IMG/VR virus record: IMGVR_UViG_3300034073_005389
Span: 297,491 to 361,490 of that record
DNA: 64,000 nucleotides
Strand: one strand, 5' to 3'
Position 1 is the first letter of the stretch, and each line of letters starts with the position of its first letter. This document shows, piece by piece, positions 28,385 to 64,000 of this stretch. The notes below the pieces were generated by a model, which ran no database searches, was not told the DNA's origin, and was given only the letters and a program-made list of their open reading frames with translations. The position numbers and the translations under genes are program-made.

Positions 28385-28415
28385 AAAATCTTTCTTCTAA
28401 GGAAAAAGTAAATAA

Positions 28416-28631
28416 TTATCCTTTACGACTAACAGTTCCATAACCGTCACCGAAACCATTACCGTAACGGTCACTATAATTATAACCGTAACCATAACCG
28501 TCACCGTCACCGCCACTGTAACCGTAACCGTTACCGTAACCTTCACCGCCAAAGCCACTGTAACCGTAACCGTAACCATTACCGTAACCGTAACCGTCAC
28601 GGCTTCCAACTAGCATAAAATATTCTTCCAT
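28416..28631 (-). CDS. Gly/Tyr-repeat protein, copy 5 (71 aa)
   Basis: MEEYFMLVG-(GX)n-TVSRKG. Confidence 0.75.
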   Translation of the reverse strand: MEEYFMLVGSRDGYGYGNGYGYGYSGFGGEGYGNGYGYSGGDGDGYGYGYNYSDRYGNGFGDGYGTVSRKG

Positions 28632-41570: not shown

Positions 41571-43004
41571 CTACGAATTCATCGTATCTTCTATCAGGAA
41601 TAGTCTTAAAGAAAATCCCGTGATTTCCTCAATCATAAAGTCTAGATCCGAAATAAACAACTGATCCCGCTCGTCAAGCCCCTTCAATAAAGCAAATACA
41701 AGCTTCTTCGCCTCCAAATAAGGTATCTCACATTTGTCCTCTCCAAGAATAAAAATAATACTTTCCCCAAATGAAGATACATCTAATCCATTATACTCAA
41801 ATAACTTCATTTCCTAATAAGATCCCTAACCGCCCATAAAGGCAAAGTCACTACCTTATCTCCAGCAAGAAACTGCAAATCAGGATCAAATGCCACCAAC
41901 TTCCATCCTGTCTTTTTACAAAGACTATTAGCTTCTGCTTTCCAAGCCTTACTATATTCTGTAGTGTTATTGGTAAACTTGCCATTAGGCAAACGTCGAA
42001 TAGTGCTCATTTCGCCTCCAACCTAATAACCTCATTCCGCCAATAACGAAACAAAGTCCTATACTGAAAATAAGTCTCAAACGTACTAGTGCAATACTGC
42101 TTGTACTTATCTCCATACTCCTTACGCATATTCTTGAGCAATAGCTTCCAATCAAGATATCCTTGCCGATAACTATTCAACATAGACTTGGCAAATACCA
42201 ACTTTACATTATCTTCCCACGACAAATACCTATCTGCCATGTCATTATCCTCAGAATAAAAAATAGGCTTCATACTTTCTCCTTACCTACAATCACCAAG
42301 ATTGACCGATGGGAAACACTGACCATTATCAAGAATCCCATAAGACTTCTTGATAAAATATCTCACTGGAAAACCAACCTCAAGCTTCGCTCTTTCTCCA
42401 GCTTCTCCAACTCGCTCTGGTAATAAAGCAGATCCGACTTGCAAGCTTTCATCCTTTGCTTACAGCCACGCACATATGCCACCGCATAGGTATCCAGCCT
42501 TCCACGGTGCTGCTCAATGTGACTCAAATACATCTGAATGGATTTCTGACAACCCTCGATTTTCATTTGCAAAAATGACATTTTGTTATCCAAACCCATT
42601 TGTTGCCACATAATACCGCTCCTGTATAAGTGTATACAAAAAACTAAATAACTTCAATCAACAAATGTGTCGTGAAGATCATCCAACATATTCTCAATCT
42701 CATCACGAGGAACATCTGCCGCCACATTATCAAAACTAGACCAATACTTGGACCAAGTAGTCTTGGAAAATCTCTTATCCCTCTCTGGATGAAACCACTC
42801 ATCATTCAGAATAAGAGCCACCTCAAAACGATCATAATAATCCGATTCCATGCCATCCCTCCGAGGGGAACAATAATGAGTTTGACTTGCTTGAATGGAA
42901 ACCGTCAAATCCCCAATCTGAATAGGCTGAAAATGAGTATAGCTGCCAGGAACCCGCGTCAATACAAAATCAATCATGGCTATTCTCCTATCAAATAGGG
43001 TCAA
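41571..43004 (-). other. Run of five small hypothetical genes
   Basis: 41571-41810, 41807-42010, 42007-42273, 42363-42611, 42654-43004 (last has SIQAS.THYCSPR motif). Confidence 0.55.
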
Positions 43005-49468: not shown

Positions 49469-49801
49469 CTACTTGCGCGAAATACCACCATTCTGCCCAC
49501 GACTCGCCACAAACTTATTGCTCCCAGCAAGATAATCAGCAATCCGCTTGCTCAATCGACCATAATCCTCATACCGATTGCTAATCTTAGCAAACACCTG
49601 CCCAATCAGCAATGGCTTCACCACCTTTGCGTTATTGTTCTCATCAAAAATACTATTCAAAGCATTCTCAATCAGAATATCCTCCGAAAGATTGACATTC
49701 TCCCATTCCACCAAATCCCCCATAAACTTATTCAGCGTAGCCTCATGATCAATCGCACCCGCGTCATTACGAATAACATAGGAAACAAAATCAATCTTCA
49801 T
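49469..49801 (-). CDS. Winged-helix-like protein (AT-rich copy)
   Basis: SYVIRNDAGAIDHEATL.KFM.DL...IADYL...RGQNGG. Confidence 0.65.
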   Translation of the reverse strand: MKIDFVSYVIRNDAGAIDHEATLNKFMGDLVEWENVNLSEDILIENALNSIFDENNNAKVVKPLLIGQVFAKISNRYEDYGRLSKRIADYLAGSNKFVASRGQNGGISRK

Positions 49802-49869: not shown

Positions 49870-50300
49870 AACCCATACATACTTATCTGCCTATTTACCC
49901 ATTCACACATACATACATTTTTTCTGCCCGCTTACGCACACCCGTATACCCACCAACCATAAACATACTCTCCCATTCATACACACCCCTACTTACACTC
50001 CCCCAATAACCTATAAACTATAATAAATACATTCCACCCAAACTAACTACCCAATATCTCAATACCTACACCCCCACACACATCTATATGCAAAATTTAT
50101 TCTACCTATACCTTATACAATACCACTATTCCTTATTTCCATAACTTACATTTCTCCCGCCCCCATTCTTTATTTCCCTAAATCTGCACCCCATTTCTTT
50201 CTTATTTCTACTTATTTATAAAATAGATTATGTAGTTTAGTGTATATGTGTATTGATGTGTCTATGTTTGTGTGCAGTATAATAAATAAAAAAAGTTTGT
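49870..50300. other. Non-coding strand-skewed boundary segment
   Basis: About 350 nt nearly G-free (C/A/T) on +, flipping to C-poor G/T-rich at about 50225; no ORFs. Confidence 0.7.
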
Positions 50301-50451
50301 TTTTGGCTAGGGCAAAAACCATTGTGTGCAGTTGTTTGAATCTATGCCTAAATGTGTTTTGCGCCCTAGCCAAAAAGCATTTTTTTTAGGGCTAGGGCTT
50401 ATGCCACACCCAATTGCCAACCGAATGCATTTATCCAAAAACACAAACACA

Positions 50452-50557
50452 AAAAAAAAAGCCAATGGCGGGATTTCCGCCATTGGCTTTCACACACGCA
50501 AAAAAAGACAAAAAAAAAGACAAAAAAAAAGCCCCAGCGCATTGGCGCTGGGGCTTT
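50452..50557 (-). terminator. Two tandem intrinsic terminators closing the GC-rich cassette region
   Basis: GCCAATGGCGG..CCGCCATTGGC and GCCCCAGCGC..GCGCTGGGGC, each preceded on + by long A runs. Confidence 0.8.
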
Positions 50558-50577
50558 GGGAGACGGTCAGTCAGGTT

Positions 50578-50925
50578 TCACCGAGCGATGCGCTCGACTC
50601 CGCCATTCTGACCACGCTGGGCGTGGAATCGCGTCTTGTCTCCCAAGTAATCCGCGATCTTCTTAGAGAATTCCCCGAACTGAGTGAACGAAACACCCTT
50701 TCCGAGAAGGTACTGGAACGCTTCGCCCACCACCAGGGGCTTGGGCATGCGTTTGTTATCGTGACGGTCAAAGACCGAGTTGACGGCTTCGCGGATGAGT
50801 TCGAACTCATCCGCCGAAGCGGACTCGAAAGCGATGAGGTCTTGCATGAACTTGTGGAGCGTTTGCTCGTGATCGATGGAACCATCATCCGAGCGAACCA
50901 CGTAGCTAGCGAGATTGATCTCCAT
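50578..50925 (-). CDS. Winged-helix-like protein (GC-rich copy)
   Basis: SYVVRSDDGSIDHEQTL.KFM.DL...IADYL...RGQNGG; GGAGG RBS. Confidence 0.7.
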   Translation of the reverse strand: MEINLASYVVRSDDGSIDHEQTLHKFMQDLIAFESASADEFELIREAVNSVFDRHDNKRMPKPLVVGEAFQYLLGKGVSFTQFGEFSKKIADYLGDKTRFHAQRGQNGGVERIAR

Positions 50926-51222
50926 GACTGTATCCTCCGAAGGGCGTTGCGGCGTGATTGCCTGCCCTCAATATTGGTTCTGCAGGTTGACCGATGGGTG
51001 CAACCGGGACAAAAAAACCTTTACTCAGGGGCATGTTGACCGATGGGTACAATCCATCTAAAAAACCAAAACCCCCGTTGAATAGCAGAGGTTGACCGAT
51101 GGGCGCTTTGACGCGCAGGTACATTGTAGATTAGAGGTTGACCGATGGGAACCCGATTGCACTTGGCAAAAAAAAATCCCAGGTGCCTAAGCACCTGGGA
51201 TAAGATAAGACTCACTTTAGTA

Positions 51223-51396
51223 CTAGCTGGTTCGCACCTGGTAACCCACCGCCTTCTCCAGGCTCTTGTCGGTTTGGCTCAGGTTCAGCTTGAGCGCTTC
51301 CTTACGAGCCGTAAGCAAACACTCGTACACCTTCACCACCGACTCAGACAAGGAGTTGCTTTCCAGGTCCAGCTGCAGACGAACGATCTTGTACAT
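51223..51396 (-). CDS. Cassette hypothetical protein
   Basis: AGGAGG RBS, start MYKIV. Confidence 0.6.
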   Translation of the reverse strand: MYKIVRLQLDLESNSLSESVVKVYECLLTARKEALKLNLSQTDKSLEKAVGYQVRTS

Positions 51397-51518
51397 AGAG
51401 CCTCCTATCAGGAATGACCCTGACACAGTAGTATTGCCTGGTTGACCGATGGGTGCGATCCATTAAAACTTGCTCAGGTACAGATGTACCTGAGCAAGTT
51501 AGGCTAAGCTACTACCTG

Positions 51519-52079
51519 TCAGCCGTGAGAGAAGCTGACCTTGGTGGGTCGGGTTGCCATCAGCTTGAAGTCGCTGGTGAACGTACGCTCCTTCATCACA
51601 GGTCCAGAACGCTTACCCATCACCCTGGCGATTGCCTCGTCACGGTCCACTTCCATCGTGATGTGATTAGTGGAGCCGTCTTTGTTGGTGATCTTGGAGT
51701 CAATCACCCCTCGACAACCTGGCGGTCCAGCATCTAGCTTGCGATCCACCCACCTGGACGCTTCCCCACTCATGTAGAAACCCATCTCCTCCAACACTCC
51801 ACCCTTCGCATCGTAGATGCAGGCGTTGATGGGCTTCTGCACCTTCTCACGCTGGCGTGTAGCCTTGGCTTCCTGCTTCTTCTCAGGAACCCTGAGAAGG
51901 TCTTGCAAGACCGCCTCTTGCACCAGCTTGAGCGCTGGCGTCGGATACAGCTCTCCCTTCTCCAGGCGAGCCAGAATCGAGACAGCCTCGGGAATCCCCG
52001 AAAGGAACTCCCTTTGAGCCTGCAAGAAAGCGGCAGCGGAAACCTTACCAGCGGACTGACGCAGGAACTTCTTGTGCAT
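51519..52079 (-). CDS. Cassette hypothetical protein
   Basis: GGAGG RBS, start MHKKF. Confidence 0.7.
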   Translation of the reverse strand: MHKKFLRQSAGKVSAAAFLQAQREFLSGIPEAVSILARLEKGELYPTPALKLVQEAVLQDLLRVPEKKQEAKATRQREKVQKPINACIYDAKGGVLEEMGFYMSGEASRWVDRKLDAGPPGCRGVIDSKITNKDGSTNHITMEVDRDEAIARVMGKRSGPVMKERTFTSDFKLMATRPTKVSFSHG

Positions 52080-52189
52080 AGGAACCTCCAAACAAAGCCG
52101 TGATTGGCTCACCTATGTTTGTGCAAGTTGACCGATGGGTTCAAGCCACTGAAAACGCTCTTGAGACCATGTGGTCTCAAGAGCCTAGA

Positions 52190-52399
52190 CTAGAAGCTCA
52201 AAGGCGATCCATCCTCGTGTTCAGACTCCTCCGGCAACATGTCAATGAATGGGGCTGCCGTCTCCCAATCATCCTCACAGGCACCTCCCCTGAGGTTGAG
52301 CGTGTGAATACGCTCAAAATCAGGAATATAGCTGTCCATCTCATCTTCCAACATGGGGACGGATCGAGGAACGTATTGCTTTCCCATAACTACCTCCAT
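52190..52399 (-). CDS. Cassette acidic hypothetical protein
   Basis: Between motif 52432 and 3' hairpin. Confidence 0.55.
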   Translation of the reverse strand: MEVVMGKQYVPRSVPMLEDEMDSYIPDFERIHTLNLRGGACEDDWETAAPFIDMLPEESEHEDGSPLSF

Positions 52400-52528
52400 G
52401 AACCATGATTGGTTCACAATAGGTTTAGCAAGTTGACCGATGGGCTACCTGGATTGCACTCAACAAAAAAAAACGCCCTAGTACTCGTGTGTGAGTACTA
52501 GAGCGTTTAGGTGTGTGAGACTGTTTAG

Positions 52529-53110
52529 TTACACGCCGAGAGCAGCAAGCCGCTCATCGATGTTATTGATGCGTTCTTGTTCCCACGCTTCCGCACCAGG
52601 ATCATCTTGGTTGTGAGCGTGTAGCAGTGCTTCCACTGCCACTCGACGCTGAGCAATCAAGTTGTCAATCTCTCGCTGCCTGGGATTGGGCATACCTTTG
52701 ACGTAGCCCTGCAAGGTAGCTTGAGCGGTTGGTGCTGGAGACTTGCCGTATCGCTCTTGTTGGATCAAGTACCTGGCTCGTTGCCTGGCACGATCCAACT
52801 GCAAGCTGTACAGCTCACCAGTGTATGCGCCCGTGAACTTCTCAATGGCTCTGATGATTTCTTTCTTTGTCTCCGCTTCGGACTTTTCCTTGTTTGCCAG
52901 ATTGCACTCATGGATGAACGTTTTAGCGTCCTCCAAGGTTGCAACCTTGGTCGGCATGGGCGGAGGCGTTTGAGCAGGCTTGACAGGCTTGCTTACCACC
53001 TTTCGCTCCTCGGGAATGGTCCGGATTTGGATTGTCTGACGCTTCTCTTGCAACTTGGCAAGAGACGCAGCATACAACGCAATCATTTCGCGGAGATCGA
53101 CTTTGTTCAT
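52529..53110 (-). CDS. Cassette hypothetical protein
   Basis: GGAG RBS, start MNKVD. Confidence 0.7.
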   Translation of the reverse strand: MNKVDLREMIALYAASLAKLQEKRQTIQIRTIPEERKVVSKPVKPAQTPPPMPTKVATLEDAKTFIHECNLANKEKSEAETKKEIIRAIEKFTGAYTGELYSLQLDRARQRARYLIQQERYGKSPAPTAQATLQGYVKGMPNPRQREIDNLIAQRRVAVEALLHAHNQDDPGAEAWEQERINNIDERLAALGV

Positions 53111-53231
53111 GTTTACTCCAATCCACTGACAAGTGCCAGTAGACACCTATGGTTGTGCTGGTTGACCGATGGGTGTGAGCCGCTGAAACAAAATGCTCAG
53201 GTCTATATAGACCTGAGCACCTGTCAACTCG

Positions 53232-53480
53232 TCACCTCTCGTCAGTGAGAACCATCACGAACTCCTTGTCAAGCAAGATCTTGAGCGCATCATCCTGTTC
53301 GGATGGATGCAGCTGTACTTCCAAGGGGAAGAATCGGCTCCAATCATAGGCTCGAACCCGGTATTCTTCCGGCTCACCTGCACAGTCCCAAGTAGGACCT
53401 TTGGCTGGAACATAGTCCAGCTCCAGGTCTACGGTAATGGTTTTGTGGTTGCGTACGATCTGCATCTGAATGTCTTTCAT
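53232..53480 (-). CDS. Cassette hypothetical protein
   Basis: AGGAGG RBS. Confidence 0.65.
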   Translation of the reverse strand: MKDIQMQIVRNHKTITVDLELDYVPAKGPTWDCAGEPEEYRVRAYDWSRFFPLEVQLHPSEQDDALKILLDKEFVMVLTDER

Positions 53481-53574
53481 AAAACCTCCTGGGTCAATGG
53501 TGGTGTAGTAAGTTGACCGATGGGTGCATACAACTGAAAACGCTCATGGAACCATATGGATCCATGAGCATAAA

Positions 53575-53820
53575 CTAGATGATGTTGAGCCTGCTCCAAA
53601 ACCTTTGGCTTTCTTTCCCTACCTCACACAGAGGCAAAGGAGCGACTTCATTTTGAGCAAGCATGCGCCTGACTTTACGCCCTTCCTGGTCCTCCTTGAA
53701 ACCAGGAAGGCAAATAAAGTCTCTGGAAACGGCTTCAGAGAATGCGTCCTCCAACGCAATCTCGAACTGTTTCTCAGACTCGAACTTATAGCCACTGATA
53801 GTGTAAATGCACTGTGCCAT
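53575..53820 (-). CDS. Cassette hypothetical protein
   Basis: GGAGG RBS, start MAQCI. Confidence 0.6.
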   Translation of the reverse strand: MAQCIYTISGYKFESEKQFEIALEDAFSEAVSRDFICLPGFKEDQEGRKVRRMLAQNEVAPLPLCEVGKESQRFWSRLNII

Positions 53821-53939
53821 AAATAGCACCTCCGTAACCTACTTACTGCTTGTTGACCGATGGGTTACCTGGATTGAACTTAACAAAAAAACCCAGGCTT
53901 ACATGGACTCATTAGAATCCACATAAACCTGGGCTCTCA

Positions 53940-54167
53940 CTACCTCACCAACACGAAGGTGTTGGGTTGACCCAGCCAGCTGTTGAGCTGGGTCGCCATC
54001 TGCCTTGCATCTTGGTATGTGTACTCTTGTACACGAGTTATGCCGTTGCGAGTGTCTCGCAACTTCCAACCTTTCTCCTCGAACAATGCCAGGAAACAAT
54101 CCTGGCAAATCGGCTTGCAGTTGAACTTGCATGTGCTTGCGCTTTTATCACACATCTGGCAGTTCAT
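53940..54167 (-). CDS. Cassette Zn-finger-like protein
   Basis: CQMC...CQDC. Confidence 0.6.
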   Translation of the reverse strand: MNCQMCDKSASTCKFNCKPICQDCFLALFEEKGWKLRDTRNGITRVQEYTYQDARQMATQLNSWLGQPNTFVLVR

Positions 54168-54280
54168 AATGCCTTTCCATCTACTCTGTTTGGTGAGTAG
54201 ACACCTATACCTATCTATGTTGACCGATGGGTGCACACAACTGAAACGTTGTGCAGGAGTTGCCTCCTGCACAACCTTTC

Positions 54281-54739
54281 TCAGTAGTCGTCGCGACCCG
54301 ACCACCGATCCTGTTCCATGTACTGCATGTACCTCTCCTCCTCGTTCCAGTGCTCGTAGGGTCGCATCATACGAGCGTTGTAGTCTCTGAGTACCGACTC
54401 CAGCGCCTCCCGCTTGGCGTGGAGCCTGTTGATGTAGGCGTCTCGCTGCGCCTCCATCTCTTCGTTCACCTGCTCTCGTAGGTGATCGCGCTCCTCCTTG
54501 GTCAAGTCGCGACCAAGAGCAGACTCACGACTACAGAACTCCTCATACGCACGCTCTTGGAAGAGGTCATCCTCCATCTCACGTGCGTGGTCGTCCCAGT
54601 GGTAACGCTCGATCTGAGCATTGGTATCATTCCACTGAGAGGCGAGACCCTTGATGATCTCCTCCTTTGCCTGAGCGATCAGGCGCTCGTGGTCCGTAGC
54701 GTTTTCGGGGCACTCGATGTTGATCACGTATCCACGCAT
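54281..54739 (-). CDS. Cassette acidic protein, paralog of 45425-45865
   Basis: RPYEHWNEEERYMQYME. Confidence 0.7.
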   Translation of the reverse strand: MRGYVINIECPENATDHERLIAQAKEEIIKGLASQWNDTNAQIERYHWDDHAREMEDDLFQERAYEEFCSRESALGRDLTKEERDHLREQVNEEMEAQRDAYINRLHAKREALESVLRDYNARMMRPYEHWNEEERYMQYMEQDRWSGRDDY

Positions 54740-54867
54740 ATCAGCCTCCAGACAAGCCTTGATTGGCTCACTTATGTTTTTGCATGTTGACCGATGGGTA
54801 CAGCCCACTGAAAAAAAACCGTGTCAGGAAATTCCTGACACGGCTAGGTATGTACGCTAGTTGGCGA

Positions 54868-55074
54868 TCACTTGACCTTGATCACCAGACCGTTTTGCAC
54901 GGTCACCTCTGCGTACCAGGTATGGGGCTGCGGGTAGTGCGGTCCACCTACCGCAGTAGTCCCATTCTCTGGCGGGTTGCCGAGACCAGGTGCGTAAATA
55001 TGCACCGGTTTCCCGGCAGCCACATCATCCTTGAGTTGCTTCTTGGTCTTGTAGTTCTTGGTGGTGTAGAACAC
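54868..55074 (-). CDS. Cassette conserved small phage protein
   Basis: KTKKQLK...GPHYPQPHTWYA. Confidence 0.75.
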   Translation of the reverse strand: MFYTTKNYKTKKQLKDDVAAGKPVHIYAPGLGNPPENGTTAVGGPHYPQPHTWYAEVTVQNGLVIKVK

Positions 55075-55202
55075 TGAACCCTCCTAGACAAAGCCGTGAT
55101 TGGCTCAATGGTAGTTGTGCAGGTTGACCGATGGGTACGGACCACTGAAACATGCTTGGAAGCATTCGCTTCCAAGCACGTTTTGTTGAGAGTGTTGTTA
55201 GA

Positions 55203-56827
55203 TTACTTCTTGTTGCTCTCCTTGTAGAGTACGATCAGCTGTTCGTATACCTGGCTGTGATGGTACAATCCTTCCTGCCATTCCAGCAGGAGTTTTTTCA
55301 CCCTTTCCTGCTGAATCTCGTTGAGAGCGTTGTACAGGTACAGACCTGGCAGTTCCCCATCCCACAGCTGGGTGAGAAGCCTCTCCTCTTCCATGACCAG
55401 AGCCTTGATCTTCTGGTCGTACGCCAACTGCTTGCGCAGCTTGGCGATACGGTTTTTGATCTGGTGTACGGTGTTGCGGTTGCGGTTGCTCATGTGAGAC
55501 TCCGAGAAAGCCGTGTGTGGAGTTGTACGGCTCACATACAGTTATGCGGGTTGACCGATGGGTTAACTTGTTTGCATTTAACAAAAAAAACCCTTGGCTT
55601 GCTTGCGCAAACCAAGGGCTTTATCACTGCAACGAAAGCAAGAACATCTCTCCTTTCTGAGTGAAAGACTTGAGAATCATACCGCCAGCCATGGAGTAAA
55701 CTCCAAGGTCTGTGCCAGGATGAACTTTGCTGTTGAACTTTGCCACACGATCTCCATTGGGAGCCATGTAGGCAATGGTCAGCCCTTGCTCCAGGGCTTT
55801 CTCGAACTCAACGTGGCTAATCTGCATAGCTACCTCCTCGTATTGAAGTATGTATATTGACCGATGGGTGCAAACAACTAAAACTGCAAGCACCTGATTG
55901 CTCAGGTGCTTGCAAGAGTCAGTACATGCTGATGCTGTTCTCAATCTCTTGGTCTTGGCTCAACCGAGCCGCCTCCTTCCAGCGGCGCTGAACCATCCAA
56001 CGGGTGACCAGCCCGTTGTACTTGAATGCTTTTTCGCACGCTTCTACGGTTTTCCGCCATGCCTCTGCCGCCTTTTGGTTACCGGTGGCGGCAGCGAACT
56101 GCCCCTCCACCGAAGCCAGGATGGAGAGAGAGATGAAAGGCGTGCTGGATCGCATGATCTTCATGTTTATCTCCTAGAGCCATTGGTTGATTGGCTCACT
56201 TGTAGTTGTGCAGGTTGACCGATGGGTACATACCACTAAAACTGCAAGTACCTGATTGCTCAGGTACTTGCGTGTTTCATGAGTTCACGTATTCCTCCTC
56301 TGCCTTATTGATGATGCGGTGCGCCAAGTTGTCAATCTCATCCATCTCTGCCTCGGTGGCTTGGTCGAGCGCACCCGCAGACACAAGCTCCATCACCTTC
56401 AGATGAAGGTTGCCGATGTTATGGCAACCATTCACGTAGTTGTATTCTCCTCGGATCTTTCCGAAATGGTTCTTGTTACAAGCAAACCCGTTGTTACGGA
56501 GATGCTTGATGACCAGGGGGATCAGCCTACCCAGTTGCATAACTTGCCTTTCCGAGCCATAGTGGCTCACTTATGTTTTTGGAAGTTGACCGATGGGTAC
56601 AACCAACTGAAACATGCTCAGGATTGCTCCTAAGCATGCTTGTCTCAGAGAGATAGGCGAGATACCACCCTGCACCCCTGACGAACCAACGAGGCAAACA
56701 TGCGCTCCCAGTTGTCCTCAGAGACGAGCATGGTTGCCTCGTCTCCTTCTTTGGTAATGTACCACAGGCGTACATTACATTTTTCTTTGATCCCAGGGCT
56801 AACTGCCCTGGGTTTTAGCTTACTCAC
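55203..56827 (-). other. Five single-gene cassettes with small hypothetical proteins
   Basis: 55203-55493, 55624-55827, 55919-56164, 56277-56540, 56645-56827; each between a motif copy and a 3' hairpin. Confidence 0.6.
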
Positions 56828-57039
56828 GTCTACTTATCCTTTCTTGCGTGAACAATAGTCCAACGCAAAGAAAAAGAACCCCATAGAACATGAAGTCAAA
56901 TAACTCCATAACTATGTTTGTACATGTTGACCGATGGGTGCGAACCATTGAAACAAGAACCCAGGATTGCTGTTGCAATCCTGGGTTCTTATCTGCTCAC
57001 CCACCGGAATCCGTTAGGACTCAACAGTGGGTGAGTGTG

Positions 57040-57900
57040 TCAACCGAGCGCCAGCTTCGCCAGGGCGATTGCGCCCTCCCGACTGCGGGCGCCGCCGATG
57101 AACCGTGCGTTGTGGCAGAATACGGAATCATGAACTCCAGTCACTGCCGCCAGCTGTTCGTTTCGTAGCCCCGCCCATGCCTCGGGGAGCGGTCGGCGTT
57201 GCCCGAAGCTCCCCATGCTGGGCGGAACGCACTGGACCAGCCAGTCGTCCGCTTGGGGGAACACGAGGAAGAGCGCGTGGGTGCTCTCCTCCACCACCGT
57301 CTGCATGACCGGCATGAACCGGTCCAGAACGATGATCTTCCCCTCGATTGCGTTGGAGATGGCGTGGCGAGCGCCCTCCAACGCGAGCATCCGACCCTGC
57401 GCAGAGGCGATCACCCTGCGCAGGTGTGCCTCTGCAAACTCGACGGCGCGGGCGAATGCGTCGTCGAAGTTTTGCGCCTCGTGCCAGCAGGGGTTGAACC
57501 CGCTGACCACATCAGAGAAGGTGTGGTGATCCACACCTTCAGTAATGCTGCGGGTGCCGTACCCGCAGTCGAGGGCGTCAACCGCCCAGATGAGGTCGCT
57601 TTCGACCTCCCCCTCCACGCCGGGGGCGATGGAAGCACCAAAGTGCTTCCACACGAGACCGGCGCTGCTGTAGGGCACCCCATTGGGGCGCACGCCAGCG
57701 CCCCCCTTCTGGTGGTGGTCGAATCGTAGCGTGGTGGGGTCATAGACCCCTCCCACGTCCACAACAACCATCCCCATCTCGATCACCTTGGGATCGCGGG
57801 TCCGGATAACCGGACCCTCGAACCCCGCCATGCGCAAAATAGCGCAGGCGAGAACGTCGTCGGCGTGGAAGGGACCATTGTGAGTGACAATACTGCTCAT
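57040..57900 (-). CDS. MYG1/UPF0160-family DHH exonuclease
   Basis: THNGPFHADD, RTRD, DVGGVYD, FDHHQ, SSAGLVW, FCH. Confidence 0.9.
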   Translation of the reverse strand: MSSIVTHNGPFHADDVLACAILRMAGFEGPVIRTRDPKVIEMGMVVVDVGGVYDPTTLRFDHHQKGGAGVRPNGVPYSSAGLVWKHFGASIAPGVEGEVESDLIWAVDALDCGYGTRSITEGVDHHTFSDVVSGFNPCWHEAQNFDDAFARAVEFAEAHLRRVIASAQGRMLALEGARHAISNAIEGKIIVLDRFMPVMQTVVEESTHALFLVFPQADDWLVQCVPPSMGSFGQRRPLPEAWAGLRNEQLAAVTGVHDSVFCHNARFIGGARSREGAIALAKLALG

Positions 57901-58032
57901 GTGAGCCTCCTAGAAAGCCGTGTGTGAAGTTGTACGGCTCACATACAGTTGTGCAAGTTGACCGATGGGTACAAGCCATGTAGAAAATCGGTGAGTCAGA
58001 ATCTCGAAAGACTCAATGACTCACCGAGTGTG

Positions 58033-58506
58033 TCAACCGTAGAGCGTTCGGAGGGTCGCGCAAACGCGCGTCGCCTCCGATTGTTGGAACCGCTCCACTT
58101 TCTGGAGCAGTTCGATTGACTCTTCCCGGTCCATGCCGGGAAGCTGACGGAGTGCCAGCAACAGCAGTTTGCTGCTGGCGGTGGGTGCGCCGTCGAAGCG
58201 CACCACCTCACCGTTGAGGGTGAGGGAGAAGGGCTCATCGCCCTCCTCGCCCTCGCCCTCGCCCTCATTGCCGAGTGCCTCACCGAGTGACCATGCGGTC
58301 ACTCGGTGGGAGGAGGTGCCTGAGTGCCCGTCAAGGCGCACCGACACCCCCTCCTCGTGGGTGAGGGTAAGAACTGCGGGGAGGAGTAACGTACTCCTCC
58401 CGATGTGGTGCCTGAACGAGCCGAGGACAATCGCCCCCAGCTCGTTCAGCACCACCTGGCGGGGTTCAAACCCCGCCATGGCTGCGAAACCAGTTGCAAT
58501 AATCAT
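58033..58506 (-). CDS. Cassette hypothetical protein
   Basis: AGGAGG RBS, start MIIAT. Confidence 0.6.
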   Translation of the reverse strand: MIIATGFAAMAGFEPRQVVLNELGAIVLGSFRHHIGRSTLLLPAVLTLTHEEGVSVRLDGHSGTSSHRVTAWSLGEALGNEGEGEGEEGDEPFSLTLNGEVVRFDGAPTASSKLLLLALRQLPGMDREESIELLQKVERFQQSEATRVCATLRTLYG

Positions 58507-58680
58507 TGCAACCTCCTTGCAGAGTCTATCCACTACCCGTAATAGATCAGCATGACCTGTCATCAGGTAACAGCTTCGACTCTCACATACAGTTGTGCAA
58601 GTTGACCGATGGGTACAAGCCATGTAGAATCAGTGAGCCGGAATCCCGAAGGACTCAACAGCTCACTGATTCCGGGACAC

Positions 58681-58911
58681 CTACAGATCGTAGACGCCCC
58701 GTTGTCCCACGATTGACCAAGAGGAGTACTCCTCTTGGTCAATCATGGTTGTGTGTCCGACGATGAGGTTTTCAAACCTCTCGTCGGTCACCAGTTTGTA
58801 GGCGTCGCCACGTAGCAACGCCTTTGCCGCCCGCATGGCGAGCGGCAGAGGGAGACCCGTCTTTCGACGGATCTCCCTCCCCAAAACCACACGTCTTCGT
58901 TTCAGTGTCAT
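58681..58911 (-). CDS. Cassette basic hypothetical protein
   Basis: GGAGG RBS, start MTLKRRR. Confidence 0.6.
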   Translation of the reverse strand: MTLKRRRVVLGREIRRKTGLPLPLAMRAAKALLRGDAYKLVTDERFENLIVGHTTMIDQEEYSSWSIVGQRGVYDL

Positions 58912-59059
58912 TTGACACCTCCACTTACTTGTTTGCAAGTTGACCGATGGGTGCGTGCCAGTTAGATTGACCAGCCGGAATCCCGAAGGACTCAACAGCT
59001 GGTCAATACTACCCCCTCACTGAAGCTCAACCCTCTCAGGGAACTTCAGTGAGGGACCT

Positions 59060-59407
59060 TCACACCTCACACCAGGGAATAGTCTCCCTGGTGAAATCCT
59101 CCTCCACCTCATGCCAGCCGAACTGGTCGGCATGAGGTGAAACCCTCCCCACGTAGCGGACCAAACGAAATGGTCCGCTGTGGGGGTAGTCCGTATCGTA
59201 CGCGGCGGACTCTTCGTCCACCTCGTACGCCACCACCCACGCCATTCCGGCGTGGAAGCCACGCGCCCACGGGGGCGCGTCGTCGCCCCGAAGAGCCCAG
59301 AGCCCTTCGGGGTGGGTATAGAGGAGGTCACGGACCTCCTCCATGGTGGGGATGGGGAGGTCCGTCTCCGGAACCTCCCCATCCCAATCAGGAAACATCA
59401 CCCTCAT
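59060..59407 (-). CDS. Cassette acidic hypothetical protein
   Basis: AGGAGG RBS, start MRVMF. Confidence 0.65.
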   Translation of the reverse strand: MRVMFPDWDGEVPETDLPIPTMEEVRDLLYTHPEGLWALRGDDAPPWARGFHAGMAWVVAYEVDEESAAYDTDYPHSGPFRLVRYVGRVSPHADQFGWHEVEEDFTRETIPWCEV

Positions 59408-59575
59408 GGTGACCTCCTTGTAGAGTCTATCCACTACCCGCAACAGATCACCACGATCTATTATCAGGCAGTAGCTTCGACCCTCACATACAGTTATGCA
59501 AGTTGACCGATGGGTGCACGCCAGTTAGATTGACCAGCCGGAATCCCGAAGGACTCAACAGCTGGTCAATCTCAC

Positions 59576-59797
59576 TCACTGCGGGAGGAAGCTCCGAAGA
59601 GCCTCCATCGCCACAGCGAGGGTTGCGCCCCCGCCCGTGCGGTCCCACGCCCCTCGGGCGTGGTTCTCCGCTGCTGGCACGTAGGTGACGTGCCAGCAGC
59701 GCCCGCAGGCGCACCCATCCGGGGAAGGTGGCGTGATCTCCACCTTCCCCGGACCCCAGGCGGCACAAGCCGCCTGTACCAGAGATTCGAAGTCCAT
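59576..59797 (-). CDS. Cassette hypothetical protein
   Basis: AGGAGG RBS, start MDFES. Confidence 0.6.
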   Translation of the reverse strand: MDFESLVQAACAAWGPGKVEITPPSPDGCACGRCWHVTYVPAAENHARGAWDRTGGGATLAVAMEALRSFLPQ

Positions 59798-59972
59798 GTG
59801 GACCTCCTCAGAGAGCGTATCCACTACCCGCAATAGATCACCACGATCTATCATCAGATAGAGGTTTCCACCCTCACATGCAGTTATGCAGGTTGACCGA
59901 TGGGTGCGAGCAGTGTAGAAACTCGGCAAGCCGGAATCCCTTACGGGACTCAACAGCTTGCCGAGGGGGGAG

Positions 59973-60185
59973 TCAATGAAGCTTGAAAAGCTTCATTGCC
60001 TCCCCCGCTGTCATTTTTTGCGGGAAGTCGTATTCATATACGACCCCCGCTACGTCGTACGTGAGTCCGAGGTACACAAGTACCTCGGACTCTGGGGGGA
60101 GGACTGCCAGCCTCTGGCAGTCCTCCCCGTGCAAATATGGATAGCCCCATAAATCGGGGCTCATCCACTCGTAGAATTCCTCCAT
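59973..60185 (-). CDS. Cassette protein, paralog of 61286-61489
   Basis: M.EFYE...LP..SEV.VY.G..Y...G.VY....P..MTA.EA.K.F. Confidence 0.7.
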   Translation of the reverse strand: MEEFYEWMSPDLWGYPYLHGEDCQRLAVLPPESEVLVYLGLTYDVAGVVYEYDFPQKMTAGEAMKLFKLH

Positions 60186-60447
60186 GGAATTCTCCTTAGA
60201 GAGCGTATCCACTACCCGCAATAGATCACCATAATCCATTATCAGGTAACAGCTTCAACTCTCACATACAGTTACGCAGGTTGACCGATGGGTGCAAGCC
60301 ATGTATATTAACAAAAAAATTGAAATACTCATATACTCTTGTGTGAAAAGAAATAAGTAACTTATACAAGTTGACCGATGGGTGCAAGCCGTGTAGAGTA
60401 ACGAGCCGGAATCCTTTGCAGGACTCAACGACTCGTCACTCGCATTG

Positions 60448-61110
60448 TTACTTGCGATTTTTCTTGCCACCAAAGTGGCTCAGAAAACTCGCAATCGCAC
60501 CCGCCGATGCGGGCTCACCTCGCACCGGAGGCGGAGGGGGAGGAGGAGGGGGAGGAGGAGGAGGGGGAGGGTATTCTGAATAATACCTCTCCTTATAATA
60601 CTCCTCCTTCAATCCCCCTGCACTCATGACAAAGCGCGAATACGCGATTTTGTCATGAAAGTTCTCCCAAGAGACCGACCAATCAGCCTCAATTGGGAGA
60701 ACCAGCCACTCTTTGCTGCGGTTTCCATACCGGGACGTGCTCAAATCCCGGTGAAGTTTACACCCCCGGAACACCGGGTCCCCCAGGGTGTAGCGTTTCC
60801 CCCCTTGGGGGATTGCCCTGACCGTGACGCATTGCGCCACGATCAGATCGTCGGCAGCCTTTTCAGCTGCCTTGCGTGCGGCTTCTTCAGCCGCTTTGGC
60901 TGCTTGCGCAGCCTCCCGCGCAGCTGCCTGCGCCGCCCGCTCCGCCCGCTCCTCCGCCAGACGAGCCTCTACCTGGGCGGCAAATGCCGGGTCCAGGTAG
61001 CTCCTTCCCGCCGCCCCGATAGGCGGCGGAGCCGCTTGCCCCCACGGATCGTAGGAGCCGCGCTGCGTGCCGGGCTCCTCCCCGTTGAGATAACGGTTCC
61101 AGTCACCCAT
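60448..61110 (-). CDS. Cassette protein with Ala/Glu/Lys helix and poly-Pro tract
   Basis: GGAGG RBS; AAEEAARKAAEK; run of about 14 Pro. Confidence 0.7.
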   Translation of the reverse strand: MGDWNRYLNGEEPGTQRGSYDPWGQAAPPPIGAAGRSYLDPAFAAQVEARLAEERAERAAQAAAREAAQAAKAAEEAARKAAEKAADDLIVAQCVTVRAIPQGGKRYTLGDPVFRGCKLHRDLSTSRYGNRSKEWLVLPIEADWSVSWENFHDKIAYSRFVMSAGGLKEEYYKERYYSEYPPPPPPPPPPPPPPPVRGEPASAGAIASFLSHFGGKKNRK

Positions 61111-61285
61111 AGGTGACCTCCTTGTAGAGTCTATCCACTACCCGCAATAGATCACCATGATCTATTATCAGGTAGAGGCTTCCACTCTCACATGCAGTTA
61201 TGCAGGTTGACCGATGGGTGCGAGCAGTGTAGAAACTCGACAAGCCGGAATCCCTTGCGAGACTCAACGGCTTGCCGAGCGACGG

Positions 61286-61489
61286 TCAGAGGAAGGCTTT
61301 TTGAGCCTCCTCTGCCGTCATTACTTCCGGGGCGCCGTGTTGGTACACGTACCCCGACATTTCGTATTCAATTCCGAAGTACACGCGTACTTCGGAATCG
61401 ATCGGGAGGGCGCGGAGGCGGACTTTATCCGCCTCCGCGAGCCAGGCGCGACCTACGTCGCCCCCCCCGCACTCGTAGAATTCCTGCAT
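61286..61489 (-). CDS. Cassette protein, paralog of 59973-60185
   Basis: See paralog alignment; AAGGAG RBS. Confidence 0.7.
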   Translation of the reverse strand: MQEFYECGGGDVGRAWLAEADKVRLRALPIDSEVRVYFGIEYEMSGYVYQHGAPEVMTAEEAQKAFL

Positions 61490-61804
61490 GGAATTCTCCT
61501 TAGAGAGCGTATCCACTACCCGTAACAGATCACCACGATCTATTATCAGATAGGGGCTTCCACTCTCACATATAGTTGTGCAGGTTGACCGATGGGTGCA
61601 GACCATGTATATTAACAAAAAAATTGAAGCAATCAACCGCTACTCGGTATTACTTGCGTGCCTTGTCGAGAAAATAATAAGTAAATAAATAAATACAAAA
61701 CAATAACTTGAATAGCCATAGATTCAAATAAGTTGACCGATGGGTGCAAACCACCAAAACTTGAACCCCCGGACTCACCTATACAGATGAGCCGGGGGTC
61801 CATC

Positions 61805-62035
61805 TCAGTCGGCACCTCCTTTCTCGGTTGCGGTGGCGGCGGTGGCGTACCCGTGGAACCACGGGTCGCCACCACCGATGAGGTGGGCGTCGGAGGCTGC
61901 CCAGTCAGCCTCCGACATGTTGTTGAGGGCGCGGGGACCCCAGTAGGGTCCCGCCCCCGAACCAAAGGTAAAGGCGTCACCTGGGGACGCCTCTACCTCC
62001 CAGGTTTTACCCTGGAAAACAACGACGCACTTCAT
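61805..62035 (-). CDS. Cassette hypothetical protein
   Basis: Between motif 62096 and 3' hairpin. Confidence 0.55.
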   Translation of the reverse strand: MKCVVVFQGKTWEVEASPGDAFTFGSGAGPYWGPRALNNMSEADWAASDAHLIGGGDPWFHGYATAATATEKGGAD

Positions 62036-62259
62036 GTGCGCCCCTTTCTGAGAGCCTCGGCGGGATTGCCATAGCTCTCACATACAGTTACGCAGGTTGA
62101 CCGATGGGTGCGAACCATGCAAACAAAAAAGTGGATGGTCTTTCGACCATCCACTCATCTAGCTGCGGTCTCGCTCCAGATTGGTGGAGTCCCCGCTCAG
62201 GACTGCTAGAGTCCCCTCAGGTTACGCCTGAGGACGTTCCCTCGTCACCACCGAGAAGA

Positions 62260-62619
62260 TCAGACGATCTCTCGGAAAGCGACGAACCCGAATACGGCGG
62301 TCTTGGTGACCGAACCGTCAGGGTTCGTCACTTCGACGGAGCGTCGCTCCGTCGTGGTGACGACCACCCGTCGCCCCTTGGAGAGCAGGCTCCGGATGGT
62401 GGTGTAGACCAGGGAGGTTTCTCCCATGATCATCACCACGTCTCCGGGAGCGCATTGCTCCACCAAAGTGGCGGCGAGGGTGGCAACTTCCGCCATGGTG
62501 GCGGAAGCGGGGACGTTCGGGAACGCGATGTCCCTGATGTCCCCGCCGAGCGCCTTGGCGGCGCTCAGCTGGTCCTCGCCCCACTTCTGGGACGGGTGGT
62601 TAGAAATGTTCACAAACAT
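62260..62619 (-). CDS. csx20: Csx20-like CRISPR-associated (putative ring nuclease) protein
   Basis: FVNISNHPS.KW...Q..AA..G.I.D..FP.V, MGE, TTER, K...F.FV.FRE pattern recalled for Csx20-type proteins. Confidence 0.65.
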   Translation of the reverse strand: MFVNISNHPSQKWGEDQLSAAKALGGDIRDIAFPNVPASATMAEVATLAATLVEQCAPGDVVMIMGETSLVYTTIRSLLSKGRRVVVTTTERRSVEVTNPDGSVTKTAVFGFVAFREIV

Positions 62620-63149
62620 TTCCAACCTTCCTATCGGCTTGATCGGGCTCCTCTATCAAGCCCAGCCGATAACCCTACCACAAGCGATGAATCAACATGA
62701 CTCATCATCAAGCGGCAGGCTCACTTATAGTTGTGCAGGTTGACCGATGGGTGCAGACCCCTGAAATAAAAAACCCCCCGGTCACTCCTGCCCACTATCA
62801 CCCGGTGCCTTTCAGCGTTGGTGAAGTGTTTTTATGGCAATAATTGGAGGGACCGGGGGGGATGCTAGGTCATAACAGCATCCTCCTATAACTGTCACTT
62901 CACTTAGTAACAGTTACACTAATAGATAAGTATGTTGACCGATGGGTGCGGACCCCTGAAATAAAAAAACCCCGCCACGCTGCAAAGCGTGGCGGGGCAC
63001 AACAGGGCATAGAGATAACCCTTTCCGTAGCCTATAGTAGTAAGATAACTCCTTCCGGCAAAATGCTCCGAAGTTATCTTCGTACCTTAGCTACACTAAT
63101 AGATAAGTATGTTGACCGATGGGTTAACTTGTTTGCATTTAACAAATAA

Positions 63150-63468
63150 AAAAACCCTGACCAGCTTTCGCCAGTCAGGGTTTGTATGAACGGCGTAGGG
63201 ACTCTGCCTCCCTCTTTCACCCTCTAAGTCACGGGCTCCGTTCTACTTGGTCCTTTGAGCATCGCAATGGTGTGCGTGCTCGTTTTTCCTCCGCGCCGAC
63301 CCCAGGGTAGGACTCTTTGCCCCGTATCGGGTTTGCGTGTGCGCTTATCCCGCCCTGTCTATCCAGGTTTCAGGCGGTTCTTTCCCGGCGCGCACAATGG
63401 GTCCTATAAAGGACCGTCAGTAGGGGAACACATAAGTGTCCGAGATCCCCAGATGCAACTAGCATCCT
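63150..63468 (-). ncRNA. Candidate structured non-coding RNA (~320 nt)
   Basis: Between motif 63484 and a terminator; no RBS-led ORF; nested long-range stems. Confidence 0.5.
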
Positions 63469-63616
63469 ACTATAACTCAGTATGTTGACCGATGGGTACA
63501 AACCATGTAGAATCTCGACAAGCCAGAATCCCTTGCGGAACTCAACAGCTTGTCGAGTCTCTCTCCCCACCTCTACCAGAATCCGTTAGGACTCGATGAT
63601 AGAGGTGGGGAGGTGT

Positions 63617-63859
63617 TTACTTGCGGCGGCTAAGCTGGTGGGCTCGCGCCCAGCCAGCCGCCGACGCCGCCCATGCCGCCACCGCCGCCGTGAGGCAGGC
63701 GATGGCGAGCAGGGCGATTCTGGCGGGGGCGTTTTTCGCCCCCGCCGCCCTCGCCGCCCAGTGGGCGGCGAGGGCGCGCCAAAGCGCGCTCCTCTCCGCC
63801 GCCCAGGCGGCGCGCGCCGACCTGAGGTCGGCGCGGATTCGAAAGAGGGACTTTTCCAT
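63617..63859 (-). CDS. Cassette Ala/Arg/Trp-rich small protein
   Basis: Purine-rich RBS, followed by conserved 3' hairpin. Confidence 0.55.
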   Translation of the reverse strand: MEKSLFRIRADLRSARAAWAAERSALWRALAAHWAARAAGAKNAPARIALLAIACLTAAVAAWAASAAGWARAHQLSRRK

Positions 63860-64000
63860 GGTCCCTTCCCTTCAAGCCCCATTGACACCCATAGACAATC
63901 GTCTCTCACCATGAGAGATTGGACTTCTCTGGCATGCCATGCGGCTCATGTATGGTTTGCTAGGTTGACCGATGGGTACAAACCATGTAGAAATTCGACA

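What the first reader, a model, noticed from the sequence alone, without database searches (positions are those of the whole stretch)
56995..63612. Conserved bulged RNA hairpin replaces classical terminators in the most GC-rich cassettes
Seen: ten hairpins whose outer stems vary with full compensation while the core UG-UU(bulge)-GAGUCC/GGAUUCCG is nearly constant. G-U pairs and UUCG/GNRA loops work only on the minus-strand RNA, and long U tails are absent. Inference: a sequence-specific protein-binding or processing site (compare RNase III sites between T7 early genes) or a phage-polymerase terminator.
Basis: partly seen in the sequence, partly recalled or inferred. Interest (0 to 1): 0.62.

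Follow-up and report, generated by a model that had tools for sequence, protein, structure and literature searches.

The report
Conserved bulged hairpin between phage cassettes
A 371-kb freshwater/subsurface phage has a conserved bulged RNA hairpin after the first dozen mini-genes of a 50-plus cassette array, in the slot where other cassettes have ordinary terminators; the motif is real and undescribed, but the module it belongs to resembles known phage terminator-promoter cassettes.

Summary
Ten hairpins (window 56996-63612, minus strand) share the core G-[UU]-GAGUCY-loop-RGAUUC-C. An eleventh is cut by the window end.

- **Structure:** Every modelled pair forms in all ten copies, and 11 of 17 pairs show compensatory changes. 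With four related metagenome contigs there are 27 distinct copies in 9 outer-stem families. The five inner pairs, including a G.U wobble, stay essentially invariant.
- **Strand:** There are 53 G.U cells and no A.C cell, and 16 of 27 loops are GNRA or UUCG. The folded strand is therefore the mRNA-sense strand.
- **Distribution:** No Rfam family matches. No copy was found elsewhere in the phage record, in 185,579 species genomes or in IMG/VR.
- **Context:** The hairpin starts 1-8 nt after a stop codon. It lies about 25 nt upstream of a phage-specific bipartite promoter present about 50 times, only in this array. The phage encodes a sigma factor, and no RNA polymerase gene was detected.
- **Shuffling:** Cassette order differs between populations, with breakpoints in the repeated promoter/leader.

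Best reading: it is the terminator/insulator half of a PeSL-like composite terminator-promoter module. Its apical core is a recognition site for an unidentified factor. Processing, antitermination and DNA-level roles are not excluded.

The parts
56996..57035 (-). Bulged hairpin 1 (loop UAAC). It starts 4 nt after the MYG1-family gene stop and is followed by a second, ordinary hairpin at about 56955-56990.
57988..58027 (-). Bulged hairpin 2 (loop UUCG). Flanking pairs are CA/UG and the top pair is U-A. It is followed by AUUUUCUAC.
58626..58673 (-). Bulged hairpin 3 (loop UUCG).
58966..59007 (-). Bulged hairpin 4 (loop UUCG). It has the same outer stem as hairpin 5 but follows a different ORF.
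59527..59572 (-). Bulged hairpin 5 (loop UUCG).
59922..59965 (-). Bulged hairpin 6 (C-G closing pair plus GUAA loop).
60396..60441 (-). Bulged hairpin 7 (U-A closing pair plus GCAA loop).
61235..61280 (-). Bulged hairpin 8 (C-G closing pair plus GCAA loop).
63514..63557 (-). Bulged hairpin 9 (C-G closing pair plus GCAA loop). It is the second hairpin of a tandem pair.
63563..63612 (-). Bulged hairpin 10 (loop UAAC, bulge UC). It is the first of a tandem pair and begins a few nt after the stop (63617-63619) of the 80-aa ORF.
63995..64000 (-). 3' arm of an eleventh copy, cut by the window end. The full copy (UUCG loop) is seen in L167 around position 9837.
57958..57970 (-). One of the promoter -35-like motifs (sense-strand ACCCATCGGTCAA) that follow the hairpins by about 23-26 nt. 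The other hairpin-adjacent copies are at 58602-58614, 58940-58952, 59503-59515, 59893-59905, 60371-60383, 61207-61219, 63485-63497 and 63965-63977.
57971..57987 (-). Example of the conserved linker (A/U)UUCUAC(A/C)UGG between hairpin and promoter. Its complement supplies a TAGAAT-like -10 box for an antisense sigma-70-like match.

Best explanation
The hairpin is an RNA structure in the 3' untranslated end of cassette mRNAs. It is the terminator/insulator half of a composite stop codon - hairpin - UUCUAC linker - phage promoter - leader module repeated along a unidirectional array of more than 50 mini-genes.

- **Shown:** the fold, its strand, its position, its lineage-wide conservation, and cassette shuffling at the module.
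- **Inferred, lower stem:** the long, very stable lower stem with its GNRA/UUCG loop stops or attenuates host-core RNA polymerase and shields the upstream mRNA 3' end.
- **Inferred, apical part:** the invariant apical part (a two-nucleotide U bulge above a G-C pair, then G-C, A-U, G.U, U-A, C-G) is read sequence-specifically by a factor not yet identified, from phage or host. That factor would make 3'-end formation efficient or regulated where the U tract has shrunk.
- **Side effect:** the repeated modules also serve as homology for recombination that reorders, deletes and duplicates cassettes.
For: - **Structure and strand:** 27 distinct copies from five assemblies are 98.9% paired. The outer 11 pairs show 3-5 pair types each, and the five inner pairs are invariant in 133 of 135 cells. 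There are 53 G.U cells and no A.C cell. There are nine independent outer-stem families. GNRA or UUCG loops make up 16 of 27.
- **Spacing:** the spacer between the two core arms is 4 or 6 nt, and the extra two bases always pair. That fits a hairpin and not a double-stranded operator.
- **Slot:** the hairpin starts 1-8 nt after a stop codon and ends about 23-26 nt before the promoter motif, where other cassettes have a hairpin plus T run.
- **T runs:** in 5 of 34 hairpin units at least four T lie in the stretch between hairpin and next promoter. One relative (L163:7883-7928) has a long T run straight after the stem.
- **Module travels with the promoter:** an identical hairpin-plus-promoter block follows unrelated ORFs (58966-59007 and 59527-59572).
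- **Shuffling:** cassette order differs among freshwater populations, with joints at the promoter motif. A 220-aa cassette indel is explained by a crossover inside the repeated leader.
- **Polymerase:** a phage sigma factor is present and no phage RNA polymerase was detected.
- **Precedents:** PeSL stem-loops are tested terminators placed between stop codon and promoter (PMC2839356). Conserved terminator motifs are reported in phiKZ and 201phi2-1 (PMC10914365, PMC11512511).
Against: - No transcript data exist, so no 3' end is mapped.
- Most copies fail a T-run criterion. Bacterial core polymerase terminates poorly without a U tract (own knowledge).
- A hairpin starting 1-8 nt after the stop would be partly covered by a terminating ribosome.
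- No candidate binding protein was found. ProQ/FinO, dsRBD and RNase III searches were negative, and all cassette proteins but one are orphans.
- Pure termination does not require an invariant bulge and wobble.
Confidence: 0.5

Rival explanations
1. The hairpin is a processing site and not a terminator. Read-through transcripts are cut in or beside the hairpin by host RNase III or another endonuclease, as between T7 early genes. This leaves a protective 3' hairpin on the upstream message.
For: The hairpin has 17-21 bp with a one-sided two-base bulge, which is the size and asymmetry of T7 R sites (own knowledge). Copies are U-poor and sit in an early-looking unidirectional array. The linker after several copies fits the RN/WUU RNase E preference (own knowledge; sequence).
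Against: No RNase III or dsRBD gene was found in the phage. Every cassette has its own promoter, so cistron separation is not needed. RNase III does not normally need an invariant sequence. No RNA data are available.
Confidence: 0.18
2. The hairpin is a nut- or TAR-like protein-binding site. A phage protein binds the U bulge and G.U helix on nascent RNA, possibly through an arginine-rich peptide. It then modifies RNA polymerase (antitermination through the roughly 35 downstream terminators) or controls mRNA fate.
For: All 13 copies of this phage lie in the first 8.3 kb at the head of the array, upstream of the classical terminators. The core is invariant but the loop is free. A conserved linear motif follows the hairpin, a boxB/boxA-like arrangement. 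A 76-aa head-cassette protein (58681-58911) starts with an Arg-rich stretch.
Against: The long outer stems are unnecessary for a binding site. Each hairpin lies upstream of the next promoter, so it is present only in transcripts coming from the cassette before it. The Arg-rich protein has no detectable relatives or family. Nothing links it to the RNA.
Confidence: 0.12
3. The hairpin acts at the DNA level. The sense strand folds as single-stranded DNA and is the site of a recombinase or nickase that captures or moves cassettes, in the manner of an integron attC site or an HUH enzyme.
For: The context is a cassette array with polarity and a GC gradient from its head. The hairpin is imperfect, with extrahelical bases and strand specificity. 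Cassette order varies between populations. Both arms contain GANTC.
Against: No tyrosine recombinase or Y1 HUH transposase was found in the record, and none near the array head. The conserved part is apical and not at the stem base as in attC. Observed breakpoints lie in the promoter/leader repeats and fit homologous recombination. RNA-type tetraloops are enriched. GANTC is neither enriched nor avoided genome-wide.
Confidence: 0.07
4. The core has no function of its own. It is kept by descent and gene conversion among repeated modules, and only hairpin stability is selected.
For: Modules clearly recombine and copy each other. The motif is confined to one phage lineage.
Against: The variable 3' outer arm lies between the invariant core and the invariant promoter, so homogenisation by proximity does not explain the pattern. 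The G.U wobble and the bulge, both destabilising, are never repaired in 27 copies, while outer pairs changed up to five ways.
Confidence: 0.08
5. The element serves a plus-strand (antisense) sigma-70-type promoter, TTGACC-N17-TAGAAT, whose transcript starts at the hairpin base.
For: Five hairpin-adjacent plus-strand promoter matches score 9-10 of 12. TAnnnT at the right spacing occurs in 15 of 26 hairpin modules against 8 of 74 others.
Against: Eleven of 26 lack the key last T (TAGAAA and similar). The predicted start would remove the 5' outer arm. The plus-strand fold has A.C mismatches and is 4-15 kcal/mol weaker. No plus-strand genes or terminators follow.
Confidence: 0.05

Closest known systems
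PeSL (promoter-early stem-loop) regulatory cassettes of T4-like phages (Arbiol et al. 2010, PMC2839356; Comeau et al. 2014, PMC4122927)
   Same: Both are composite intergenic modules containing the upstream stop codon, a stem-loop with G-T pairs, a promoter, a Shine-Dalgarno sequence and a start codon. Both are densely repeated around orphan genes in a hyperplastic region. In both, recombination between modules causes cassette indels and reordering.
   Different: The promoter here is a phage-specific bipartite motif (ACCCATCGGTCAAC ... TATAAGTGAG) and not a sigma-70 consensus. The stem-loop lies upstream of the promoter and has an invariant bulged apical core over a freely varying base. PeSL stems are simple G/C or A/G runs. 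The phage gave no T4 capsid-family (Gp23) match, though the search's control genomes did not ring either. Mini-circles were not tested.
Conserved terminator motifs of giant phages phiKZ and 201phi2-1 (PMC10914365; PMC11512511)
   Same: Many terminators of one jumbo phage share a sequence motif that folds into the terminator stem-loop.
   Different: Those motifs were mapped by 3'-end sequencing, mostly score as intrinsic terminators, and belong to phages that carry their own RNA polymerases. Here there are no RNA data, the U tract is weak, and no phage polymerase was detected.
RNase III sites between T7 early genes (own knowledge)
   Same: Both are long hairpins with an asymmetric interruption and no U tail, placed between early genes that are all transcribed in one direction.
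   Different: T7 sites share shape and not an invariant core. T7 early genes share upstream promoters, whereas each cassette here has its own. Cleavage is untested.
Integron attC sites
   Same: Both involve a cassette array and a strand-specific imperfect hairpin with extrahelical bases, placed just after the ORF.
   Different: attC conserves the R box at the stem base and varies at the tip, which is the reverse of this hairpin. No integrase was found. Cassettes here carry their own promoters, and breakpoints lie in promoter/leader repeats.
Lambda nut boxB and HIV/BIV TAR hairpins bound by arginine-rich peptides (own knowledge)
   Same: Both are small conserved RNA hairpin determinants. TAR has a U-rich bulge directly followed by G-A-G, as here. 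In nut sites a conserved linear box lies next to the hairpin.
   Different: In boxB the loop is the determinant, whereas here the loop varies. No binding protein has been identified. The position is at the 3' ends of genes and not in a promoter-proximal leader.

Membership tests
Any Rfam family | A score at or above the family's gathering threshold | tested here: not met
   No hit overlaps a hairpin at gathering threshold across the whole window. None overlaps at E <= 5 in 50000-64000.
Intrinsic (Rho-independent) terminator | A stable G+C-rich hairpin at a gene's 3' end on the sense strand | tested here: met
   Folding energy is -24 to -34 kcal/mol with z -6 to -8.8. The hairpins start 1-8 nt after stop codons.
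Intrinsic (Rho-independent) terminator | A U tract immediately after the stem (at least 5 T in 8) | tested here: not met
   None of the ten window copies passes. Tails are UUUC, AUUC or UUUUC. A minority of related copies do have T runs.
Intrinsic (Rho-independent) terminator | Transcripts end there | not testable with these tools
   No RNA run holds the sequence.
PeSL-type composite terminator-promoter cassette | A stem-loop and a promoter joined in one repeated intergenic motif between stop codon and next start codon | tested here: met
   The stop, hairpin, linker, promoter, leader, SD and ATG order is seen in every hairpin cassette.
PeSL-type composite terminator-promoter cassette | Association with indels and reshuffling of orphan genes between close relatives | tested here: met
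   Joints fall at promoter motifs in other metagenomes. The 220-aa cassette is missing in L160, and L160 carries a chimeric leader.
PeSL-type composite terminator-promoter cassette | A sigma-70 consensus early promoter on the sense strand | tested here: not met
   The sense-strand motif is CCCATCGGTCAAC-N9-TATAAGT. Sigma-70-like matches occur only on the antisense strand.
Integron attC | Conserved R''/R' (RYYYAAC / GTTRRRY) pairing at the stem base, with a variable tip | tested here: not met
   The base of the stem varies and the tip-proximal helix is invariant. GTTGAGT occurs, but its TT is bulged and it lies on the 5' arm near the tip.
Integron attC | An IntI-type tyrosine recombinase beside the array | tested here: not met
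   PF00589 is absent from the record although it rings in all 14 control genomes. Nothing was found among genes at the array head.
RNase III processing site | About two helical turns of double-stranded RNA, often with an asymmetric internal loop | tested here: inconclusive
   The hairpins have 17-21 bp with a 2-nt bulge, which is compatible. Cleavage cannot be tested here.
IS200/IS605- or REP-type HUH hairpin | A Y1 HUH transposase (TnpA or RAYT) in the genome | tested here: not met
   PF01797 is absent.

The most novel reading that the evidence does not exclude
The array is a polar, integron-like gene-capture system of a jumbo phage. New GC-rich cassettes would enter at the head, next to an iteron-rich region, and then drift toward the phage's 32% GC as they move down the array. 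The bulged hairpin, folded as single-stranded nucleic acid, would be the recognition site of a still unrecognised capture or shuffling enzyme.
Probability: 0.06. Interest if true: 0.85.

Novelty: new variant of a known kind. Interest (0 to 1): 0.52.

Why it matters
If the core is a protein recognition site, this would be a clean natural example of a sequence-specific 3'-end signal layered on a generic terminator hairpin, in a phage that appears to use host core polymerase with its own sigma factor. That would make it testable how large phages insulate and time dozens of tiny orphan genes.

It also extends the PeSL idea, in which regulatory modules double as recombination substrates for gene shuffling, beyond T4-like phages. 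Here it appears in an uncultivated 371-kb freshwater/subsurface phage. The compact module (strong hairpin plus orthogonal promoter) could also serve as a synthetic-biology part. The motif can be submitted as a new RNA family.

Tried and rejected
- **Rfam:** gathering and E-value scans found nothing at the hairpins.
- **IMG/VR scans:** exact-pattern scans for core, promoter, core+promoter and core+linker gave only single chance hits or none. The three core+linker hits do not fold into the hairpin.
- **Species genomes:** two scans of 185,579 species genomes, one for the promoter and one for hairpin+linker, returned zero matches, so there is no host clue.
- **Phage collection:** near-identity BLAST found no match. 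The UvrD helicase has only 39% or lower relatives.
- **Integron or HUH mobility:** no tyrosine recombinase and no Y1 transposase were found.
- **Phage polymerase terminator:** no T7-like or Rpb1/Rpb2-type domains were found. Pfam can miss divergent phage polymerases, and 9.8 kb of the genome is not in the record.
- **Phage RNA-binding or processing genes:** RNase III, dsRBD and ProQ/FinO were not found.
- **GANTC idea:** both arms are GANTC, but the site is neither enriched nor avoided in the genome.
- **Double-stranded operator:** rejected because the half-site spacing varies between 4 and 6 nt and the outer arms covary.
- **CRISPR-repeat mimic or Cas12a-repeat resemblance of the UCUAC linker:** considered from memory; only 3 bp could form, so dropped.
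- **Arg-rich 76-aa cassette protein as binder:** no Pfam, PHROG or Atlas lead.
- **RNA evidence:** no RNA run holds the stretch.
- **Possible decayed copy at 42323-42359:** E 0.074 and no bulge, so not claimed.


Full report
**Setting**

The window is the last 64 kb of a 361,490-bp IMG/VR virus record with 32% GC. It encodes phage-type functions: a UvrD helicase, an RNA ligase, an amidase, a spore-photoproduct-lyase-like protein, 11 tRNAs and a group I intron. Genes and tRNAs lie almost entirely on the minus strand.

The same phage was assembled elsewhere as 366-371 kb contigs. L167:9860-20243 is 100% identical to the record's last 10.4 kb. The preceding 9.8 kb of L167 is missing from the record, so the record is truncated inside the array.

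**The array**

The plus-strand motif TTGACCGATGGGT occurs 50 times in the window with up to two mismatches, always on the plus strand. About one match is expected by chance. Its 9-nt core occurs 48 times in the genome, all in the last 58 kb.

In the gene orientation it reads ACCCATCGGTCAAC, followed 9 nt later by a TATAAGTGAG-like box. A Shine-Dalgarno sequence and a small ORF follow 30-100 nt downstream. I take this as a bipartite promoter.

The phage encodes a 209-aa sigma factor with regions 2 and 4. No T7-like or multisubunit polymerase domain was detected. This suggests host core polymerase with a phage sigma factor, which is an inference.

GC rises from 0.32 to about 0.6 toward the array head. 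In L167 the head follows about 550 bp of AT-rich iteron-like repeats. All cassette proteins tested are orphans except one MYG1-family exonuclease.

**The observation**

Ten hairpins with the described core lie at 56996-63612 on the minus strand. An eleventh is cut by the window end, and two more lie beyond it, giving 13 in the phage. All 13 are in the first 8.3 kb of the array.

- A covariance model finds no other copy in the record.
- On the ten copies every modelled cell pairs, and 11 of 17 pairs show double changes. No shuffle of 500 reaches this.
- z-scores are -6.0 to -8.8 for the minus-strand RNA, against -3.1 to -5.6 for the plus strand.

A metagenome scan for hairpin-plus-promoter returned four contigs from related populations. 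Together these give 27 distinct copies in nine outer-stem families.

- Of 459 cells, 98.9% pair. Each outer pair shows 3-5 pair types.
- The inner G-C, A-U, G.U, U-A and C-G pairs are invariant in all but two cells.
- The bulge is UU in 23 copies, UC in 3 and UA in 1.
- Loops vary, but 16 of 27 are GNRA or UUCG.
- There are 53 G.U cells and no A.C cell, so the mRNA-sense strand is the folded one.
- The two core arms are 4 or 6 nt apart, and the extra bases always pair. This argues against a double-stranded operator.

**Position and module**

Each hairpin starts 1-8 nt after a stop codon. It is followed by (A/U)UUCUAC(A/C)UGG and, about 23-26 nt after the core, by the promoter motif. Other cassettes carry a hairpin plus T run in the same slot.

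- Units with the core hairpin average 0.60 GC (n = 34), against about 0.50 for the rest (n = 82).
- Some related copies are followed by a T run (L163:7883-7928).
- An identical hairpin-plus-promoter block follows unrelated ORFs (58966-59007 and 59527-59572). The hairpin therefore travels with the promoter module and not with the gene.

**Shuffling**

No RNA run holds the region. DNA contigs from the source subsurface study and from several independent freshwater studies do hold it. They carry the cassettes at 90-99% identity but in other orders. Joints fall at promoter motifs, for example 57969 or 58613 joined to 60368.

L160 lacks the 220-aa cassette. Its leader at 2968-3085 is a chimera of the window leaders at 61218 and 60292. 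This is the signature of a crossover within the repeated promoter-leader.

**Interpretation**

The architecture matches the PeSL cassettes of T4-like phages. Their stem-loops were shown to terminate, and their repeats mediate modular shuffling (PMC2839356, PMC4122927). Conserved terminator motifs are also reported for the giant phages phiKZ and 201phi2-1.

What is distinct here is the invariant destabilising bulge and wobble in the apical helix, over a freely varying base. The variable 3' arm sits between the invariant core and the invariant promoter. Homogenisation by proximity therefore cannot explain the pattern, and selection on the core sequence is the simplest reading.

I conclude that the hairpin is the 3'-end-forming half of the module (a leaky terminator or insulator that also protects the 3' end). 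I also conclude that it carries a recognition determinant for an unknown factor. Confidence is 0.5.

**Rivals**

- **A nut- or TAR-like binding site:** the head-of-array position, the conserved adjacent linear motif and an Arg-rich 76-aa cassette protein are suggestive only.
- **A DNA-level recombination site:** no integrase or HUH enzyme was found, the conserved part is at the wrong end for attC, and breakpoints lie in the promoter/leader.
- **An antisense sigma-70-like promoter:** matches exist, but the key T is missing in 11 of 26 modules and the fold is weaker on that strand.
- **Mere descent:** contradicted by the conservation pattern.

**Distribution and novelty**

No Rfam family matches. 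Hairpin-specific patterns found nothing in 185,579 species genomes and only chance hits in IMG/VR. The motif is so far confined to one uncultivated phage lineage. I rate it a new variant of a known kind (composite terminator-promoter cassettes). The hairpin itself is an undescribed RNA motif.

Noticed in passing
window 948-63977 (50 sites); G000 303397-361458: A phage-specific bipartite promoter-like motif (sense ACCCATCGGTCAAC-N9-TATAAGTGAG) precedes about 50 small genes, all in one orientation and only in the last 58 kb of the genome. The phage encodes a 209-aa sigma factor (G000 around 27957-28586) that could read it.
   Followed up: partly
window 28000-64000; L167 8600-20243: GC falls smoothly from about 0.63 at the array head to 0.32 along the direction of transcription. 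Paralogous cassettes differ in GC: 50578-50925 at 0.55 against 49469-49801 at 0.43, with 46% protein identity. The shift is therefore at least partly in situ, through amelioration or biased conversion, and not only foreign origin.
   Followed up: partly
L167 8050-8600 (beyond the window end): The array head abuts about 550 bp of AT-rich iteron-like tandem repeats (periods 11, 22, 37 and 59 nt). This could be an origin, a terminus or a packaging-related region. The IMG/VR record is cut 1.2 kb inside the array and lacks 9.8 kb of the 371-kb genome.
   Followed up: partly
window 58496-58613, 59397-59514, 59787-59904, 60175-60292, 61101-61218, 61479-61596 (minus strand): A conserved, structured 5' leader of about 75 nt lies between promoter and Shine-Dalgarno sequence. 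There are 13 distinct copies across assemblies, with a nested-helix consensus fold around a central hairpin and visible covariation. It may be a translational control element.
   Followed up: partly
window 63150-63480, 62960-63110, 62760-62930 (minus strand): Three promoter-to-terminator units have no credible ORF. The 326-nt one folds with z -4.3 and matches no Rfam family. They may be phage non-coding RNAs or decayed cassettes.
   Followed up: partly
window 53891-53934 (minus strand); also L161 around 6459: A classical terminator with a T run carries the same two hexamers in swapped order (GGAUUC-loop-GAGUCC) at its tip, without a bulge.
   Followed up: no
window 58602-58630, 58940-58968, 59503-59531, 60371-60399, 63485-63513 (plus strand): Near-consensus sigma-70-type promoter matches (TTGACC-N17-TAGAAT and similar) point antisense into the hairpins. 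They are formed by the complement of the phage promoter plus the linker.
   Followed up: yes
window 50987-51150; 60281-60383; 61585-61745: Promoters are stacked without genes: four motifs within 160 nt, and AT-rich mini-units of 90-150 nt between promoters. They look like scars of cassette loss by recombination between modules.
   Followed up: no
window 630-824; 23786-45985: There is a group I intron on the minus strand. There are four tRNA-Leu(UAA) genes, one tRNA-Leu(CAA) and two tRNA-Arg(UCU) genes scattered among the cassettes.
   Followed up: no
window 57040-57900 (minus strand): A 286-aa MYG1/UPF0160-family exonuclease (E 6e-76, 64% GC) is the only head cassette with a recognisable family.
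   Followed up: no
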